Part shown: in pieces, positions 14,360-56,841 of the stretch | How the letters are laid out: every line of letters starts with the position of its first letter | How positions within the stretch are numbered: position 1 is the first letter of the stretch | From: Octopus bimaculoides | Lineage: Eukaryota | Assembly (NCBI RefSeq): GCF_001194135.2 | Contig: NC_068981.1 | Coordinates: 2,808,404 to 2,872,403, forward strand | DNA: 64,000 nt | Reading direction: 5' to 3' | The notes under the pieces: generated by a model | Seen by the model: only the letters and a program-made list of their open reading frames with translations | The model's database searches: none | What the model was told of the DNA's origin: nothing | Made by a program: the position numbers and the translations under genes

Positions 14360-15290
14360 AATCACTAAGTGCAAACACATCATAATCCATCCACACACAT
14401 TTCTCTCCCACAACATCTCAATTCTTTCTGACACACTGTCTAGCAATCTGGAACACCCTCAAGTCTCTGATCTTCACACTGTAAGACATTGGCAACAACT
14501 ACCTTTCTGTTTCTACCCGAGCTAGTTAAACCGAATACCAAGCTTCCCTTTTAGCTACCTGATATGGTTCTTGGCTACCCCCACTTCTCCCCACCCTCAA
14601 ACCTGTTCTCTTTTATGGCCCCATCAACCTCAATGTTCCACCACCATGTCACCTTTGTTCTGGCAAAAGTTTCACTCCAACCACAGATTTGGTCTGTCAC
14701 CCTTGGTAGATTGTCCTCTAAGAACTTCCAGTTGTCCTTTAATGTCATTATGTCTCTGTCTCTTCCTCCTCGTTATCAAATACTTCATTAAGAATGTCTC
14801 TAAATTTCAGCCCATTTCAAAGATCCTTAAGCCTCCATAACCTCCTCCTTTTCTATACCTGATTGTGTCTGTGGGTCCTTCTAACCCTAAGCCTGAAGTC
14901 ACTAACCTATACTGAGTTGTACATTCTTCATCGGGGAAGGACTTTGCATTTACAAGGATCCATCTGATCCTGTTTCTGGTGAGAATGGAATCAATCTGGC
15001 CAGTGTGCCTGCCAGAGTGATAAGTGGTCAAAATGGCTGGCTGATTTCCTGAAGTTGCTATTGCAAACCAGTAGATCTTTTGCATCACAAAACACCAGCA
15101 GCCAAGTTCCCTCTTCATTTCTAGAACCAACGTTGTAACCTCCATGCACGTCATGAAATCCAAAGTTTTTTCCCAGCCCCACCCACTGAAGTCCCCAGCC
15201 ATGATGATAACATTGTCTTTCATCATCGATGATAGTACACAGAAGGGATTCACAGAAACTGTCCTTCTGAACATCTGTCATGACATTGTT
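14360..15290 (-). mobile_element. Decayed RTE-clade LINE fragment (APE endonuclease C-terminus and linker)
   Basis: Frameshifted peptides IIMAGDF, GFHDVHGGYNVGSRNEEG, TYHSGRHTGQIDSILTR and AKSFPDEECTTQYRLV are typical of RTE endonucleases. Confidence 0.85.
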
Positions 15291-26049: not shown

Positions 26050-26474
26050 GGTACATTATTTACATTTGATGTATATTTATCCTCATCTTAATACACCATT
26101 TTGAGTGTGGCCGTTGCCAGTACCGCCTGACTGGCCTTCATGCGGGTGACACGTAAAAGCACCCACTACACTCTGAGTGGTTGGCGTTAGGAAAGGCATC
26201 CAGCTGTAGAAACTCTGCCAAATCAGATTGGAGCCTGGTGCTGCCATCCGGTTTCACCAGTCCTCAGTCANNNNNNNNNNTAGAAACTCTGCCAAATCAG
26301 ATTGGAGCCTGGTGCTGCCATCCGGTTTCACCAGTCCTCAGTCAAATCGTCCAACCCATGCTAGCATGGAAAGCAGACGTTAAACGACGATGATGATGAT
26401 GATGATGATCTTGTTTGTTGTTAACACAACGCTTCGGCTGATATACCCTCCAGCCTTCATCAAGTATTTTTTGA

Positions 26475-26480
<6 letters not shown>
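26050..26480 (-). mobile_element. Internally deleted copy of the 56-kb hammerhead element, split by a SINE insertion
   Basis: gtacattatttacatttgatgtatatttatcctcatctt (~26051-26089) resumes as ttgtttgttgttaacacaac...cagccttcatcaag (26411-26464) after a SINE. Confidence 0.7.
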
Positions 26481-26510
<30 letters not shown>

Positions 26511-26953
26511 GGTGGCGAGCTGGCAGAATCGTTAATGTGCTGGACAAAATGCTTCGCAGTATTTCGCCCATCGCTACGTTCTGTATTCAAATTCTGCTGA
26601 GGTCAACTTTACCTTTCAGGGTCAATAAAATAAGTACCAGTTGAACACTGGGGTCGATGTAATCGACTCATCCCCACCTCCACCAAGCCACCCTTGTGGA
26701 AAAACATTTGAAATAATAATAATGATAATTATTATTATAATAGATTACGATACAGTCAAAATTTGGTTTCCTCATACAGTTTATAGAACTCATTGAGAAA
26801 GTGTGTTAATACCCAATAATCATTTTGTCCAACACTGGACCCATATATGCTAATGAAAGGGTTAAAACGATATAAATGAAAATCTTCCAACAAAATTTCC
26901 TATTAATTCATGTTCCAAATATCAACTAAATAATAATAATACTTCATTATTTT

Positions 26954-37357: not shown

Positions 37358-37513
37358 TCTTTCAGTTTCTGCCTGCCATATCTACTCACAAGGCTTTGGT
37401 TGGCCCGAAGCTATAGTAGAAGACACTTGCCCAAGGTGCCACGCAGTGGGACTGAACCCGGAACGATGTGGTTGAAAAGCAAGCTTCTTAACCACACAGC
37501 CACTCATGCGCCT
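37066..37513 (-). mobile_element. tRNA-derived SINE, family A
   Basis: Collinear with the other family A copies. Confidence 0.8.
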
Positions 37514-38030
37514 GTTTGAGTGTCCACATAAATAATATATGCGTATGTATGTGTAGACATAGAAACACTTATATATATGCATGATGTGCATGAGCATCGC
37601 TGGCAAATTGTCTTATTTCTGATATTTTTTGTCTTTGTTAGTTGCCATGAGAGCTACAAAATGGCTTTTAAAGCCAGCNNNNNNNNNNNNNNNNNNNNNN
37701 NNNNNNNNNNNNNNNNNNNNNNNNNNNNNNNNNNNNNNNNNNNNNNNNNNNNNNNNNNNNNNNNNNNNNNNNNNNNNNGAGAGAAAGAAAGAGAGAGAGA
37801 GAGAAAGAAAGAGAGAGAGAGAGAGAGGTATTGGTATCCAGAAGACCCAAGATGGCAGGTAAGGCTATGTTAGTGCTACAGAAGGGCCTTAGTTAGACTC
37901 TTGGTTTGATAATAATATGAACGAGGAGTCTAATGTGGGTCTTGTGTGAATATGTATATGCTAAAAAAAAACCGAGACAACAAAGCCAAGGCTGTGTGGA
38001 GTTTTTAGGACAGTCATAAAGAGAGAGTTA

Positions 38031-38078
38031 GTCTTACAGTCGTTTCTGGGATATTAGGGATATCCCTTCATCAGAGAC
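38031..38078 (-). ncRNA. Minimal type I hammerhead ribozyme motif
   Basis: The minus strand reads GTCT-CTGATGA-A-GGGATAT(cccta)ATATCCC-A-GAAAC-GACT-GTA-AGAC. Stem I is GUCU/AGAC, stem II is a perfect 7 bp, and the triplet is GUA. Confidence 0.62.
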
Positions 38079-38148
38079 GATATGAGAGAGTTAACTAGAG
38101 GGAAATAATAGAGTTTAATATAAGGGAAATAGTTAACTCTCTTCTATC

Positions 38149-38197
38149 ATCTCTGGTGAAGGGATATCTCTAATATCCCCAGAAACAGCTGTAAGAT
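38149..38197 (+). ncRNA. Hammerhead motif with core substitution (right arm)
   Basis: ATCT-CTGGTGA-A-GGGATAT(ctcta)ATATCCC-CA-GAAACAGCTGTA-AGAT. Stem III is the perfect palindrome ACAGCTGT and stem I is AUCU/AGAU. The core has A6>G, so it is predicted inactive. Confidence 0.5.
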
Positions 38198-39769
38198 TAA
38201 CTTTCTCTTTATGAATGTCCTGAAAATTCCACACAGCTTTGGCTTTGTTGTCTCATTTTATTTAACATATATGTGCACAGGCATGGTTGTGTGACACACA
38301 CACACACACACAAGCATACATATACACACAATATTTTTGATGCGACAAGCCCAAAAGTTAGTTTAAATCTTCTGTAGATTAAAGAAAGGAAATTAAGAAC
38401 TTGGCTAATTATTGTTTTTAATTGTTACAATTATAATGAGAAACACCTGAAACTAACTGCATAACATATATATATGAAAGGAATGGCTGGCTGATTAACT
38501 GGTGTGGGGGGGGGGGGGGGGGGAGAGAAAACCTGCAAAGACCATGATAATAGCCCTTTCCTCTAAACTGATCCAATTAGAATGCATGCACCTCTATGTA
38601 ATGCATTTACACTTAGGTGTACTCTGCCACCTGCATGTGTGTGTTTCCATGTGGTGTATGTGTTTGTGCACATGTTTGCATGTGCATCTGTATGCACTCG
38701 TGTGTGTGTCTGCAAGCACACACTTTTTAACTGTTACTATTTTATATCTGCAGGTGTGGCTGTGTGCTAAGAAGTTTCTTCCCAACCACATGGTTACAGG
38801 CTCAATCCTACTGCATGGCACCTTGACCAAGTGTCTTCTACTATAGCCCTGGGCTGACTAAAGCCTTGTGAGTGGATCTGGTAGATGGAAACTGAAAGAA
38901 GCCTGTTGTATATATAATGTGTGTGTGTGAGTGTGTGTGCATGCACGCCTATGCAGATATGTATATGTATGCATGTTCAGATGTGTGTGTGTGTGCGTGT
39001 GCGTGTGTGTGTATGTGTTACCCTCCACGCACTACTTAACCAGTATTAGTTTGTTTATGTCCCCATAAGTTAGTTATTCAGCAAAACAGACCAACAGAAT
39101 AAATACTAAACTTAAGAAGTAAATATTGGATCAATTAATTTGACTAAACTCTTGACTGAAACCGATAAAAGAAAGTCGTATATAATCTTAAACAGTTTCA
39201 AAAGAAACAACCAATGATTGTCGTCTCTGAAAATTATAACAACAGGTCTTATATAAACCCAAAATAGCTTCAATGCATTGCCTGTTATTTTCATCTAAAG
39301 ATCCTACATACAGGTGAACATTCCCAGTTTTCAAGTGTTCTTTCGTTCAAGCTCCATCTAAGATAATCGCAATATATTTGACACAAATTGGCTTTCAGAA
39401 ATCTTACATTTGACTACATTCAATAGTGCAATATATTTGACAGTGTGATTTAAACGTGGAAGAGACAGACCAAAGAAAACCGAGAAGGAAGTAGCTTAAG
39501 CCGGAACTATTTTGGTTCCATTCACAAAATGACTTGACAGGAGTCGTTCTGCAGACTTTTCTGACGAGTGACAAATAGAATAAAAAATGAACACTAAAGA
39601 TGATGATGATAATGATAATGTTAACAACGGCTGTGATCTATGAATGCTCTTGCATAGATTTAAGATGATAAACATGTAAATTTACAAAAGCAATCATATT
39701 GTTTGGCTTTCAGTATCACCACACAATATAAAACAGGTAAATACTTAAAACATCAATAAAATTAATCAG

Positions 39770-53404: not shown

Positions 53405-54290
53405 GATAAGACTTGAACTTTGATGTACCTCTACCTGTAGGCTAAATTCCTCACTGAATCCATTACCAACTCTTACCTTGCTGAGAGCCCCCCTCTGTAC
53501 AAGCTATTCAGCTACACCTAGTTTTCTTAGTGACCACTTGACTATAAAATGTGGTAACTCTGACCAAGGCCTTCTCCAGGTCAATGAAATATAAGTATAA
53601 TGGCTTGGCTCTTTGCACAAACCTTTTTTCTTGTAGTTGTCTCACATAGAAGAGAGTACCTTGTAATATCTCACATAAACTAATGAGCTTACAAATTATT
53701 TGTGCTATAACTTCTTGTTTACTTCCACAGACCAGTCCAGCGATTCTTAAGCAGGGTCCGTATGGCCCTGGCAGGGAGCGGGGAGGGGGGTCTATACAAG
53801 AATTTTTGTTAAAATTTATGTGCAGTAAATTGGTTATACTTTTACAATACACAAAATATTTAAAGTTTTTTTTTATAAAATCCCTAATATTTAATTACAA
53901 AAATGGGATTTTTTAAATATTGAATGGCTATGAGGATCCACCCAAGTAAAACAAGAACCAGAGGGACCCATAGGCAACAAATGGTTGAGAACCACTGGAT
54001 GAGTCCATTAGTTAGATGCACAGTAGGTGTTTCTAGGACATCCTCTTTCATAGCAGTTGATGATTCCACTGTGGCATCAGTCATTGAGAATAACTCCATC
54101 CTGTATTCCCTGATTGACTATGCCAGTGACTCGTATGTCCCTGAATTTACTAAATATTTTCAGCCTCACAGGGACCATCTAGTGATCCTGCTGCTTTCTC
54201 TGCCTTCATAATTGTTAACGAGCATTTCAATCAAGTAGCTATCAATTACAATACTGGTCTTTCTTTGGAATTTACAAGAGATCAGTCTGT
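53405..54290 (-). mobile_element. Decayed RTE RT fragment split by a hAT MITE
   Basis: Peptides MKAEKAAG..GIVNQGIQDGVILND..IINCYE, then LFYVRQLQEK..KPLYLYFIDLEKA and YRGALSKVRVGNGFSEEFSLQVEVHQ. Confidence 0.8.
53738..53997. mobile_element. hAT-type MITE
   Basis: TIR CAGCGATTCTTAA/TTGAGAACCACTG and TSD gaccagtc/gatgagtc. Related pieces lie at ~58080-58185 and ~60288-60533. Confidence 0.7.
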
Positions 54291-55304: not shown

Positions 55305-56191
55305 AGGCTATCTGTGTGTACATGGAAGAGGCCTGTGTGCAAGAGCATTAAATCTAAGAATAACCAACCCTGATGCTAGAACACAGACAGACTCACTGAG
55401 GGAAATACCAGGAATATAGGAGATTTCTGGCGATAACACACACACACACACACACTCTCTCTCTCTCTCTTTATTTTTCTCATTTTTACTTTTCACAACA
55501 AATAGTTGGGATTTGTTGTTTTAAAAAAGATTTACTGGGAACAGAATCAGAGAGAAGGAGAGGGTGGAGCTGTGTGTATGTGGGAGAAAGACTAGAGCTG
55601 TGCATGAGAGAAAGAGGGGAAGAGAGAGGGGGGGAGGGAGAAAGAGGGGAAGAGAGAGAATGGAGCTTTTGACAGTGTCTGGCCTATAAATCTATTGAAA
55701 GTGTCTGTCTATAGGCGTCATCTATCTCATTTCTTGGTTCAGTAGACCAGAGCAGACCACTGTTTGCTGATGGAGCTCTGATNNNNNNNNNNCACCACCA
55801 CCACTCTCTTCACTCTATCCAATGACTTATCACTACATGCCACAAAACCCCTTCTCACACAGATGACACAACCCTTCATTCCTCCTTGACATTCCCCAGC
55901 CATGTATCATCCACTCACAACATAGGACACCACATACCATACCCCACACCTTGAAAGCATCCCCTAATGGGGATATGTCGGTCTTGTCTCTTTGAACTAC
56001 AAGAAAATACACAAATGGAATTCGTATCAAGAACCCATCATTGCAACATACCCCTTTAATCATTACCAATACTCACTCAGGGATCTCAAAATTGTCCCAA
56101 ACGTTAGGTTTCTCAGTTCGATATTTGAGAGATGAGGAATTATGTACATTATTTACATTTGATGGATATTTGTCCTCATCTTGTTTGTTGT

Positions 56192-56238
56192 TAACCCAAC
56201 GTTTCAGTTGATATACCCTCCAGCCTTCATCAGGTGTG
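56192..56238 (-). ncRNA. Degraded hammerhead motif (left arm)
   Basis: CACAC-CTGATGA-A-GGCTG(gagggtatat)CAACT-GAAAC-GTT-GGGTT. The core is intact but stems I and II have mismatches. Confidence 0.45.
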
Positions 56239-56445
56239 TTGGGAAAATTTTGAACCTGGGTTCTCATTCTTAAGGTAGTTTTCGATGTTGTTATTATTAT
56301 TATTATTCAGGTCACTGCCTGGAACTGAACTCGGAATCTTGGGGTTACTAGCTCCCGTTCTTAACCACTCTACACCATATGCCTGTGGGCATATAACATC
56401 AAAAAATACCTCAGGAATGAGAACCCAGGTTCGAAATTTCCCCAA

Positions 56446-56491
56446 GACACCTGATGAAGGCTGGAGGGTATATCAGCTGAAACGTTGTGTT
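56446..56491 (+). ncRNA. Minimal type I hammerhead ribozyme motif
   Basis: GACAC-CTGATGA-A-GGCTG(gagggtatat)CAGCT-GAAAC-GTT-GTGTT. Stem I is GACAC/GUGUU, stem II is GGCUG/CAGCU, stem III is the self-complementary AACGUU, and the predicted cleavage triplet is GUU. Confidence 0.65.
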
Positions 56492-56841
56492 AACAACAAA
56501 CAAGATGAGGACAAATATCAGTCAAATGTAAATAATGTTAGGTTTCACTATAATGAAGAACCTTGCCTGGCATAATCACATTTTCGACATCGTTTTCAGT
56601 TAGATTTTACTTGTCTCAATCATCAGACTCCAGTCACACTGGAGCACCTCCTTGAAAAATTTTTAGTTGAATGAACCAAGGTGCCACACAGTTGGACTGA
56701 ACCTGGAATGATGTGGTTGGGAAGCAAACTTTTTAGACAGCAACGCCTGCACCTCCATGTAAATATTCACATCGTTTGACACCTAAGACAAATGAGTAAT
56801 TATTAAATATAAATACCATTTCGAAACATCCATATCTGTCA

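What the first reader, a model, noticed from the sequence alone, without database searches (positions are those of the whole stretch)
56114..56538. Palindromic element: central Pol III tRNA-like head driving outward into hammerhead-bearing arms
Seen: 144-bp inverted arms, each with a hammerhead oriented away from the centre. The centre has a tRNA-like A/B-box head on the minus strand and an ATATGCC/GGCATAT mini-palindrome. The right half lacks the tRNA segment (gggcatat joins aacatc), suggesting a head-to-head dimer with a deletion. Inference: Pol III transcripts from the centre would self-cleave at GUU. Read-through transcripts would instead fold into ~140-bp dsRNA that sequesters the ribozyme and could be an ADAR or Dicer substrate. 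A SINE head, ribozyme and fold-back structure in one element is not a textbook class.
Basis: partly seen in the sequence, partly recalled or inferred. Interest (0 to 1): 0.85.

Follow-up and report, generated by a model that had tools for sequence, protein, structure and literature searches.

The report
Octopus hammerhead retroelement inserted head-to-head
This palindrome is an old, decayed insertion of a short retroelement with a tRNA-like head and a small dimer-type hammerhead ribozyme, and its head-to-head shape is the usual integration footprint of Penelope-like retrotransposons, not a new class of element.

Summary
Two 144-nt inverted arms (92% identical) each carry an outward-facing CUGAUGA...GAAAC-GUU motif. 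Between them lie a tRNA/SINE-like head on the minus strand and an ATATGCC/GGCATAT junction palindrome.

The motif is the minimal, dimer-dependent hammerhead described for Penelope-like elements (PLEs). It is intact only in the right arm.

The locus reads as one retro-insertion:
- a 10-bp target-site duplication, GTTAGGTTTC;
- a full-length minus-strand copy (head, (AAT)n linker, body with hammerhead, 33-nt tail);
- an adjacent inverted 5'-truncated copy.

Inverted truncated copy, junction palindrome, optional 30-40-bp tail and 8-10-bp duplication are all published PLE hallmarks.

Other copies support this:
- a single-unit copy at 26 kb in the window;
- octopod sequencing-run contigs, two carrying head-linker-body in the same order and two head-to-head with different junctions;
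- a second, unrelated hammerhead palindrome at 38 kb in the window.

So the palindrome forms at integration and is not the mobile unit.

The head-linked copy has a damaged ribozyme and a T4 run. The intact ribozyme has no promoter and no same-strand partner. Self-cleavage from this locus is therefore unlikely.

No PLE partner was identified. Modest interest: a cephalopod counterpart of the schistosome Sm-alpha elements.

The parts
56103..56112 (.). Left copy of the target-site duplication, GTTAGGTTTC
   Evidence: It is a 10-nt exact direct repeat of 56537-56546 and directly abuts the end of the tail. Equally long repeats occur in at most 1.6% of equally spaced segment pairs in this microsatellite-rich window.
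56113..56145 (-). 33-nt 3' tail of the full-length copy (ACATAATTCCTCATCTCTCAAATATCGAACTGA), present at this end only
   Evidence: It is absent from the right arm and from the 26-kb copy. The same tail recurs in P0010 (peptide VHNSSSLKYRT), in both arms of L002, and in the inverted copy of L005. It matches the optional 31-40-bp PLE tail (PMC3846280, PMC8557442).
56146..56289 (-). Body of the full-length copy (left arm)
   Evidence: Inverted repeat of 144 nt at 92%. It shares its 3' end with the other two units in the window.
56193..56238 (-). Left-arm minimal hammerhead, decayed. CUGAUGA is at 56233-56227 and the would-be cleavage site is 56198|56197.
   Evidence: The core is intact, but helix I has an AxG mismatch and helix II a CxA mismatch. 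Comparison with the third copy shows both are derived changes.
56290..56309 (-). (AAT)5 A/T-rich linker between head and body
   Evidence: The same linker position is seen in the 26-kb copy and in L004, L005, L007 and L008.
56310..56383 (-). tRNA/SINE-like head, with 5' terminus GGCATATGG and A-box-like and B-box-like motifs
   Evidence: Related to the SINE head at 37444-37518. The 3' two-thirds of the head is conserved in L008 and its last ~20 nt in L007, upstream of linker and body. GGCATATGG also starts the sense copy in L005. ARAGORN and Rfam tRNA searches are negative.
56377..56394 (.). Palindrome at the inverted junction: ATATGCC / TGTG / GGCATAT
   Evidence: Read directly from the sequence. 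Palindromes at inverted junctions are characteristic of PLE inserts and have been attributed to self-priming (PMC3846280).
56395..56538 (+). Inverted, 5'-truncated copy (right arm). It carries the body only, preceded by a 7-nt stub of the head's 5' end, and has no tail.
56446..56491 (+). Right-arm minimal hammerhead, intact. Helix I is GACAC/GUGUU, followed by CUGAUGA, an unpaired A, helix II GGCUGG/UCAGCU, then GAAA-C-G-U-U. Predicted cleavage is at 56486|56487.
   Evidence: It passes the descriptor, with 0 hits in 300 simulated windows. It equals the family consensus. Across 11 copies 85% of pair cells are paired against 18-50% for slid controls, with compensatory U-A to C-G and C-G to U-A changes in helix II.
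56537..56546 (.). Right copy of the target-site duplication, GTTAGGTTTC. Its first 2 nt could equally be the last 2 nt of the arm.
26053..26511 (-). Single (non-palindromic) copy of the same family. It has the (AAT)n linker and a body with an internal deletion, is split by a nested SINE at 26090-26407, and its hammerhead core is mutated (U3, G15.1).

Best explanation
The locus is a single, old insertion of a short non-autonomous retroelement. The host is an octopus, on three lines of evidence: the closest protein-level copies are from Octopus bimaculoides, Octopus vulgaris DNA shares the window's abundant repeats, and GC content is 36%.

Anatomy. The sense strand is the hammerhead strand. A full-length unit reads: GGCATATGG plus a tRNA/SINE-like head (74 nt), an (AAT)n linker, a ~144-nt body with a minimal type-I hammerhead about 50 nt from its 3' end, and an optional 33-nt tail.

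This locus. The full-length unit lies on the minus strand (56383 down to 56113). Its 5' end abuts an inverted, 5'-truncated second copy on the plus strand (56388-56538) through a short palindrome. A 10-bp target-site duplication brackets the whole structure.

Mechanism. This is the architecture produced by target-primed reverse transcription by Penelope-like elements, whose reverse transcriptase and GIY-YIG endonuclease would act in trans. The palindrome is therefore a by-product of integration (self-priming or template switching), not the mobile unit. Shown here: the anatomy, the family membership of the copies, the recurrence of head-to-head pairs with different junctions, and the match of the motif to the minimal-hammerhead descriptor. 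Inferred: dependence on a PLE, Pol III transcription from the head, and ribozyme activity.

Ribozyme. It has no helix III loop. Its ACGU can form helix III only between two sense copies (a double hammerhead). It would therefore work in tandem or multimeric transcripts of active family members, as proposed for PLE and retrozyme RNAs.

State of this locus. It is probably inert. The arms have diverged 8%. The head-linked ribozyme carries two disruptive substitutions and follows a T4 run. The intact ribozyme lacks a promoter. The two motifs are on opposite strands.
For: Geometry: arms and hairpin.

Ribozyme:
- The minimal-hammerhead descriptor hits only the right arm, with 0 hits in 300 simulated windows.

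Retroelement polarity: the three units in the window share the same 3' end and differ at their 5' ends.

PLE integration hallmarks:
- The 10-bp TSD abuts the termini defined by comparing family copies.
- The 33-nt tail sits at one end only and recurs in other copies.

Family evidence:
- L008 and L007 carry head-linker-body in the same order.
- L002/L003 and L005/L006 are head-to-head pairs with different junctions.
- A related family in another organism (L009-L011) has a tRNA-like head, 129-nt tandem hammerhead units and head-to-head copies.
- A second, unrelated hammerhead palindrome lies at 37965-38263 in the same window.
- Helix II shows compensatory changes.
Against: - No PLE reverse transcriptase or GIY-YIG ORF was found in the window. 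Of its ORFs of 110 aa or more, eight without gaps or simple repeats were scanned against Pfam and none matched.
- No autonomous PLE with a matching 3' end could be looked for, so PLE dependence rests on architecture alone.
- The only reverse transcriptase seen near a related copy is an APE-type LINE (L010).
- The covariation statistics are not significant with 11 sequences.
- G10.1 pairs with U rather than C in both arms here. It is G-C in 5 of 11 copies.
- Rfam hammerhead and tRNA models and ARAGORN are silent.
- Only about ten copies could be sampled, most from unidentified sequencing runs.
- The null for a 10-nt flank repeat is only 1.6% in this repeat-rich window, and an AAACGTTA next to the tail also occurs in L002, so part of the presumed TSD might reflect target preference.
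Confidence: 0.7

Rival explanations
1. It is a functional Pol III gene. The central tRNA-like head drives outward transcripts that self-cleave at GUU, while read-through RNA forms a regulatory dsRNA that is a substrate for ADAR or Dicer.
For: - A-box-like and B-box-like motifs lie in the head.
- The right arm carries an intact hammerhead.
- A strong fold-back hairpin is predicted.
- A paralogous copy supplies the first coding exon of an Octopus bimaculoides gene model (P0001), so outward transcription from such elements does occur somewhere.
Against: - The head faces only the left arm. That arm's ribozyme has two disruptive substitutions and follows a T4 run.
- The right arm retains only 7 nt of the head.
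- Minimal hammerheads showed no monomer activity and low dimer activity in vitro (PMC4209133).
- The two motifs are on opposite strands.
- The arms have diverged 8% and most family copies have decayed cores, which is the pattern of neutral decay rather than a conserved gene.
Confidence: 0.05
2. It is a fold-back or MITE-type DNA transposon with 144-bp terminal inverted repeats and a 10-bp TSD.
For: Long inverted arms flanked by a direct repeat.
Against: - The left repeat is not terminal: a 33-nt tail lies between it and the TSD.
- A single-unit copy and the other copies share only the 3' end, with variable 5' truncation.
- Other palindromic copies have different inner junctions.
- A related family occurs as head-to-tail tandems.
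Confidence: 0.04
3. Two independent insertions of a LINE-mobilised SINE landed next to each other in opposite orientation, or a later local inverted duplication created the pair. On this reading the link to PLEs is spurious.
For: - The arms are only 92% identical.
- No PLE ORF was seen, and an APE-type LINE lies near a related copy.
- SINE insertions cluster in this genome.
Against: - One TSD brackets the whole structure and abuts family-defined termini.
- Head-to-head pairs recur in L002, L005, L009 and L010 and in a second family at 38 kb.
- The junction palindrome and the one-sided tail are not features of LINE-type integration (PMC8557442).
- An 8% divergence is compatible with an old single event.
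Confidence: 0.12
4. The tRNA-like head is not part of the element. It is a SINE fragment captured once between inverted PLE terminal repeats, or inserted there later.
For: - PLEs are known to capture unrelated sequence between their terminal repeats.
- The head is absent from the 26-kb copy, from L002, and from the 38-kb element.
Against: - Head-linker-body in the same order is seen in L008 and L007, and GGCATATGG starts the L005 copy.
- The related family in L009 and L011 also has a tRNA-like head upstream of its hammerhead unit, 88% identical between the two loci over 296 nt.
- No separate TSD surrounds the head.
Confidence: 0.1

Closest known systems
Minimal (dimeric) type-I hammerheads in the pLTRs (pseudo-LTRs, the terminal repeats) of Penelope-like elements (Cervera & de la Pena 2014, PMC4209133; Lunse, Weinberg & Breaker 2017, cited in PMC6765202)
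   Same: - CUGANGA and GAAA boxes are present.
- There is no helix III loop, and 15.2-16.2 is palindromic.
- An extra nucleotide sits between positions 9 and 10.1.
- Helix II is long (6 bp) and helix I short (5 bp).
- The motif lies near the 3' end of the unit.
- Motif pairs 100-700 bp apart on opposite strands were reported in S. mansoni.
   Different: - G10.1 pairs with U here, whereas G-C was reported as highly conserved.
- The cleavage triplet is GUU.
- No PLE ORF is associated with this copy.
- The carrier has a tRNA-like head.
PLE insertion architecture (Arkhipova et al. 2013, PMC3846280; Craig et al. 2021, PMC8557442)
   Same: - An inverted 5'-truncated copy abuts the 5' end, head to head.
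- A palindrome sits at the inverted junction.
- A 31-40-bp tail is optional at the 3' end of one inverted repeat.
- TSDs are 8-10 bp.
- The elements associate with (AAT)n-type microsatellites.
- Non-autonomous derivatives and captured sequence are known.
   Different: - This unit is only ~290 nt and non-coding.
- No direct (tandem) terminal repeat is present at this locus.
Sm-alpha / Sj-alpha SINE-like retroposons of Schistosoma (Ferbeyre et al. 1998; Laha et al. 2000; as reviewed in PMC6765202)
   Same: Short non-autonomous retroelements that combine Pol III promoter boxes with a hammerhead. This is the same combination of SINE head and ribozyme.
   Different: - The schistosome hammerhead is the canonical type, active in cis and in trans in vitro.
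- Those elements occur mainly as tandem arrays.
- The host phylum is different.
- Here the ribozyme is the minimal type and the locus is an inverted pair.
Metazoan non-LTR retrozymes (Cervera & de la Pena 2020, PMC7229834; Li, Clavereau & Pollet 2026 preprint, 10.64898/2026.07.22.740005)
   Same: - Small non-coding hammerhead repeats proposed to be non-autonomous derivatives of PLEs.
- The related family in L009-L011 forms 129-nt head-to-tail arrays.
   Different: - Retrozymes are defined by tandem repeats and circular RNAs.
- The window copies are inverted or single.
- The held retrozyme texts do not mention a tRNA-like head.
tRNA-derived SINEs of octopus (Ohshima & Okada 1994, cited in PMC10886601; paper not read)
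   Same: The head resembles that of an abundant SINE in the same window: GGTTAAGAA...AACC...TTCCG.GTTCAGT.CC.
   Different: The body and 3' end are unrelated. This element carries a hammerhead and PLE-type integration scars.

Membership tests
Hammerhead ribozyme, minimal PLE type | Conserved core boxes CUGANGA and GAAA, and an N-U-H cleavage triplet | tested here: met
   Both arms have CUGAUGA, GAAA and GUU. The 26-kb copy has U3 and G15.1 changes.
Hammerhead ribozyme, minimal PLE type | [quoted passage not shown] | tested here: met
   The right arm has helix I of 5 bp and helix II of 6 bp plus an unpaired A. The left arm has one mismatch in each helix.
Hammerhead ribozyme, minimal PLE type | No loop 3, with palindromic 15.2-16.2 so that helix III forms only between two copies | tested here: met
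   A-C-G-U sits directly between GAA and U17.
Hammerhead ribozyme, minimal PLE type | Conserved G10.1-C11.1 pair | tested here: inconclusive
   The pair is G-U in both arms here. Across the aligned copies it is G-C in 5 of 11 and G-U in 4 of 11.
Hammerhead ribozyme, minimal PLE type | Covariation supporting the helices | tested here: inconclusive
   85% of pair cells are paired against 18-50% in slid controls, and two helix II pairs show compensatory changes, but the values do not exceed the shuffles.
Hammerhead ribozyme (Rfam families) | Match to a curated covariance model | tested here: not met
   No hammerhead hit at the gathering threshold or at E<=10. The models include helix III, which this type lacks.
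Hammerhead ribozyme | Site-specific self-cleavage | not testable with these tools
   This needs in vitro transcription of monomeric and dimeric constructs.
Penelope-like element (autonomous) | ORF with a reverse transcriptase and a GIY-YIG endonuclease | tested here: not met
   The element is ~430 bp and non-coding. Eight of the window's ORFs of 110 aa or more, those free of assembly gaps and simple repeats, were scanned against Pfam and gave no hit. It is therefore not a PLE itself.
PLE-mobilised non-autonomous element | Inverted 5'-truncated copy adjacent to the 5' end, with a palindrome at the junction | tested here: met
   It recurs with other junctions in L002 and L005.
PLE-mobilised non-autonomous element | Optional 30-40-bp tail at the 3' end of one repeat | tested here: met
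   The 33-nt tail at 56113-56145 is at the left end only. The same tail occurs in P0010, L002 and L005.
PLE-mobilised non-autonomous element | Short, variable TSD bracketing the whole complex insert | tested here: met
   GTTAGGTTTC occurs twice, abutting the termini. No empty site was available for confirmation.
PLE-mobilised non-autonomous element | 3' end or terminal repeat shared with an autonomous PLE of the same genome | not testable with these tools
   No octopus genome or repeat library could be searched. The exact 23-mer is absent from the three searchable collections.
tRNA-derived SINE | 5' tRNA-related head with A and B boxes | tested here: inconclusive
   The A-box-like motif has 1 mismatch and the B-box-like motif 2. 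ARAGORN and Rfam tRNA are negative. The head is similar to another SINE head (E = 0.005), and that SINE is also missed by the Rfam tRNA model.
tRNA-derived SINE | Head and body linked in independent copies | tested here: met
   L008 carries head nucleotides ~32-74, the linker and the body. L007 carries the head's 3' end, the linker and the body. L005 starts with GGCATATGG.
Non-LTR retrozyme | Head-to-tail tandem repeats with a hammerhead in each unit, giving circular RNA | tested here: not met
   There is no tandem copy in the window. Only the related family in L009-L011 is tandem. Circular RNA is not testable here.
MITE / fold-back DNA transposon | Inverted repeats terminal at both ends and copies of uniform structure | tested here: not met
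   The 33-nt tail is asymmetric, single-unit copies exist, and 5' ends are variable.

The most novel reading that the evidence does not exclude
The family may be a genuine SINE of Penelope-like elements: a Pol III-transcribed tRNA-derived head fused to a PLE 3' module with its dimeric hammerhead. It appears to be shared, with tandem, single and head-to-head forms, by octopods and at least one other invertebrate (the ERZ21867824 contigs). That would give PLEs the kind of SINE partner that LINEs have. It would also link the schistosome Sm-alpha elements, retrozymes and PLE terminal repeats into one continuum. I found no description of such a cephalopod family in the held literature.
Probability: 0.4. 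Interest if true: 0.55.

Novelty: new member of a known kind. Interest (0 to 1): 0.3.

Why it matters
The locus itself is a decayed transposon insertion and needs no new biology.

The family behind it has some value. It joins a tRNA/SINE-like head to a PLE-type hammerhead and leaves PLE-type integration scars. That makes it a compact natural substrate for three open questions:
- how PLEs build inverted and tandem copies;
- what the dimeric hammerhead does for them;
- whether retrozyme-like repeats can be Pol III driven.

Long inverted repeats of this kind are also candidate ADAR substrates in cephalopods, which edit RNA heavily. At least one paralogous copy has been annotated as the first coding exon of a host gene.

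Tried and rejected
- Rfam at the gathering threshold and at E<=10 gave no hammerhead and no tRNA hit for the window or for L009. ARAGORN found no tRNA. Both were uninformative, because minimal hammerheads lack helix III and the abundant octopus SINE head is missed as well.
- An exact 23-mer search of the metagenome, prokaryote-genome and viral collections found nothing.
- The first protein search, using the spurious ORF across the right arm, gave one hit (P0001). Its DNA could not be fetched because the gene spans more than 100 kb.
- A search with a LINE endonuclease fragment gave nothing.
- A search with a repeat-ORF profile gave one Octopus vulgaris locus (L001) that holds no copy of the element.
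- A Pfam scan of window ORFs found no RT or GIY-YIG domain.
- Unconstrained RNAfold and RNAcofold do not return the hammerhead fold. They prefer a GUUGU/ACAAC hairpin and a UCAGCUGA intermolecular helix.
- I tested whether the flanks are an older copy of the element. The result was not significant.
- I tried to name the organisms behind SRR118693xx and ERZ21867824 through the literature and found nothing.
- The RT gene near a related copy (L010) proved to be an APE-type LINE, not a PLE.
- The fold-back/MITE reading and the reading of two chance insertions were considered and rejected for the reasons given under rival explanations.
Full report
**1. The observation.**
The region holds two inverted arms, 56146-56289 and 56395-56538. 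They are 144 nt long, 92% complementary and 105 nt apart. An RNA spanning 56113-56546 would fold into one long hairpin (-250 kcal/mol; z = -27 against shuffles).

On the strand that reads outward from the centre, each arm carries ACAC-CUGAUGA-A-GGCUGG-AGGGUAUA-UCAGCU-GAAAC-GUU-GUGU. The centre holds, on the minus strand, a 74-nt piece (56383 down to 56310). This piece begins GGCATATGG and contains an A-box-like TGGTGTAGAGTGG and a B-box-like GAGTTCAGTTCC. An (AAT)5 linker follows it. A 7+7-nt palindrome, ATATGCC/TGTG/GGCATAT, joins this piece to the right arm, so that GGCATAT is followed directly by AACATC.

**2. Is the hammerhead real?**
Rfam finds no hammerhead, at its gathering thresholds or at E<=10. 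The literature explains why. Cervera & de la Pena (2014, PMC4209133) defined a minimal type-I hammerhead found in the terminal repeats of Penelope-like elements (PLEs). It has these features:
- no helix III loop;
- a palindromic 15.2-16.2 pair, so that helix III forms only between two copies;
- a long helix II and a short helix I.

I wrote a descriptor for this type. It hits the window once, at the right arm: helix I 5 bp, helix II 6 bp plus one unpaired A, ACGU, predicted cleavage at 56486|56487. It hit nothing in 300 simulated windows.

The left arm keeps the core but has one mismatch in helix I and one in helix II. A third copy at 26 kb shows that both are derived changes.

I aligned eleven copies from the window and from other loci. 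The right-arm sequence is the family consensus. In this alignment 85% of pair cells are paired, against 18-50% for slid controls. Two helix II pairs change on both sides (U-A to C-G, and C-G to U-A). With so few sequences the shuffle controls are not exceeded.

One listed feature is only half met. G10.1 pairs with U here; it is G-C in 5 of the 11 copies.

**3. Polarity and borders.**
The window holds a third, single unit at 26053-26511, split by a nested SINE. All three units end at the same point on the hammerhead strand (...AAATGTAAATAATGT). Their other ends differ. One is full length with the head. One is cut at the start of the body. One is cut in the (AAT)n linker and has an internal deletion. 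A constant 3' end with variable 5' ends is the signature of a retroelement whose sense strand is the hammerhead strand.

A 10-nt direct repeat, GTTAGGTTTC, lies at 56103-56112 and 56537-56546. Such a repeat occurs in at most 1.6% of equally spaced segment pairs in this microsatellite-rich window. On the right it abuts the arm. On the left a 33-nt segment (56113-56145) lies between it and the arm.

**4. What the architecture matches.**
Arkhipova et al. (2013, PMC3846280) and Craig et al. (2021, PMC8557442) describe PLE inserts as follows:
- a copy with an adjacent inverted 5'-truncated copy at its 5' end, head to head;
- palindromes at the inverted junction, attributed to self-priming;
- TSDs of 8-10 bp;
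- an affinity for (AAT)n-type repeats;
- capture or mobilisation of foreign sequence in trans.

They stress that the inverted copies and the tail are not seen with LINE-type integration. Cervera & de la Pena also noted minimal hammerheads 100-700 bp apart on opposite strands. The locus matches every structural point. It has no ORF, so it is a non-autonomous element, not a PLE.

**5. Other copies.**
No eukaryotic genome could be searched directly. I therefore used the stop-free reading frame that runs through the arm as bait.

The first search found an Octopus bimaculoides gene model (P0001, 'dystrobrevin beta isoform X1'). Its first 33 residues are a copy of the element.

A profile search of 1.84 billion representative proteins then returned spurious ORFs from further copies. 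One is an O. bimaculoides entry (P0010). It continues through the tail as VHNSSSLKYRT, the same reading as the left arm here. Five others come from contigs of sequencing runs SRR118693xx, fetched as L002-L008. These copies show:
- L008 holds the 3' two-thirds of the head, then the linker and body. L007 holds the last ~20 nt of the head, then the linker and body. The order is the same as here.
- The sense copy in L005 begins GGCATATGG, which fixes the 5' terminus.
- L002/L003 and L005/L006 are again head-to-head pairs, but with different junction points and spacers.
- The tail is present on some 3' ends and absent from others.

The head therefore belongs to the family, and the palindrome is made anew at each integration.

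**6. Two independent echoes.**
First, the same window holds a second head-to-head palindrome from an unrelated family (37965-38097 and 38130-38263; arms about 88% identical). Each arm carries an outward-facing hammerhead-like motif, and there is no tRNA-like head in the 32-nt centre.

Second, contigs of an ENA metagenome assembly (L009-L011) carry a related family. These contigs come from an unidentified eukaryote that shares no other repeat with the window. The family's unit is 82% identical to the arm over 68 nt. The units form 129-nt head-to-tail arrays and sit head to head with an inverted copy. A better-preserved tRNA-like head precedes them on the same strand, with A box TGGCGTAACGG and B box GGTTCAATTCT. 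That head plus unit is 88% identical between two loci.

**7. How it most likely works.**
Active members of the family would be transcribed, from the head by Pol III or by read-through. They would be recognised through their 3' module by a PLE reverse transcriptase and endonuclease. They would then be copied into a nicked target, with template switching or self-priming creating the inverted partial copy and the tail. All of these steps are inferred. The anatomy that suggests them is shown.

The ribozyme can assemble only from two sense copies. It would therefore act in multimeric or tandem RNAs, as proposed for PLEs and retrozymes (PMC4209133, PMC6765202, PMC7229834). Reported in vitro activity of this type is nil for monomers and low for dimers.

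At this locus nothing suggests function:
- the arms differ by 8%;
- the head-linked ribozyme is damaged and is preceded by a copy-specific T4 run, a possible Pol III terminator;
- the intact ribozyme has only a 7-nt stub of the head;
- the two motifs lie on opposite strands.

If the locus is transcribed across, the RNA would be a ~144-bp duplex that hides the ribozyme. That is a plausible ADAR or Dicer substrate, but it would be a consequence of the structure, not evidence of a role.

**8. What remains open.**
No PLE partner was identified. The window has no RT or GIY-YIG ORF, and the only RT seen near a related copy is an APE-type LINE. The tRNA ancestry of the head is weakly supported by the tools. 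About ten copies were sampled. The TSD lacks confirmation from an empty site.

**9. Comparison and verdict.**
Four known systems are closest:
- the PLE minimal hammerhead, which is the same motif type;
- PLE insertion architecture, which shows the same scars;
- the Sm-alpha/Sj-alpha SINE-like elements of schistosomes, which combine Pol III boxes with a hammerhead but carry a canonical ribozyme and occur mainly in tandem;
- metazoan non-LTR retrozymes, which have the same proposed dependence on PLEs but are defined by tandem repeats and circular RNA.

I file the element as a new member of a known kind. The most novel reading still open is that it represents a true tRNA-headed SINE of PLEs, shared by more than one invertebrate lineage. 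I found no description of such a family in the held literature.

Noticed in passing
window 37965-38097 and 38130-38263: A second head-to-head palindrome from an unrelated family. Its arms are 133 and 134 nt, about 88% identical, around a 32-nt centre. Each arm has an outward-facing hammerhead-like motif. One reads CTGATGA-A-GGGATAT/ATATCCC-A-GAAAC-GACT-GTA. The other has a CTGGTGA core change and a palindromic ACAGCTGT helix III. There is no tRNA-like head.
   Followed up: partly
P0001 (Octopus bimaculoides 'dystrobrevin beta isoform X1'), residues 1-33: A paralogous copy of the element is annotated as an alternative first coding exon. MPMGIW resembles the junction palindrome ATGCCnnnGGCATATGG, and the following residues translate the hammerhead region. 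The exon probably ends at the AAT|GTAAAT of the element's 3' end. The DNA could not be fetched.
   Followed up: partly
L009 3700-4380, L010 10080-10475, L011 9889-10300 (ENA assembly ERZ21867824): A related family in an unidentified eukaryote. It has a tRNA-like head with good A and B boxes, followed by 129-nt hammerhead units (CUGAAGA-A-GGCCGG/UCGGCC-GAAAC-GUU). The units occur in tandem and head to head with an inverted copy.
   Followed up: partly
window 56473-56480 (UCAGCUGA); L009 unit (UCGGCCGA): An 8-nt palindrome overlaps the 3' strand of helix II plus G12-A13. It stays palindromic in the related family despite two substitutions. RNAcofold prefers this intermolecular helix to the hammerhead fold, so it may represent a competing inactive dimer.
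   Followed up: no
window 26090-26407: Another SINE with a (GAT)n tail is nested in the single copy and flanked by an AAGAT duplication. Within it, 26207-26270 and 26281-26344 are identical on either side of a 10-N gap, which looks like an assembly artefact.
   Followed up: no
window 56099-56106 (AAACGTTA) and L002 ~700-712: The same 8-mer lies just outside the tail in two independent copies. This may be a target-site preference of the integrating enzyme, or chance.
   Followed up: no
window 37444-37518 (-), 26513-26680 (+), and many sites matched by L001 113-291: The window is dense in tRNA-derived SINEs shared with Octopus vulgaris (74-89% identity, about 180 nt). It also has many microsatellites and N gaps. 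These repeats generate long spurious ORFs.
   Followed up: no
window 14807-15274 (-) and 53508-53852 (-): These ORFs look, by eye, like decayed LINE endonuclease and RT fragments. Neither has a Pfam or protein-database match.
   Followed up: partly
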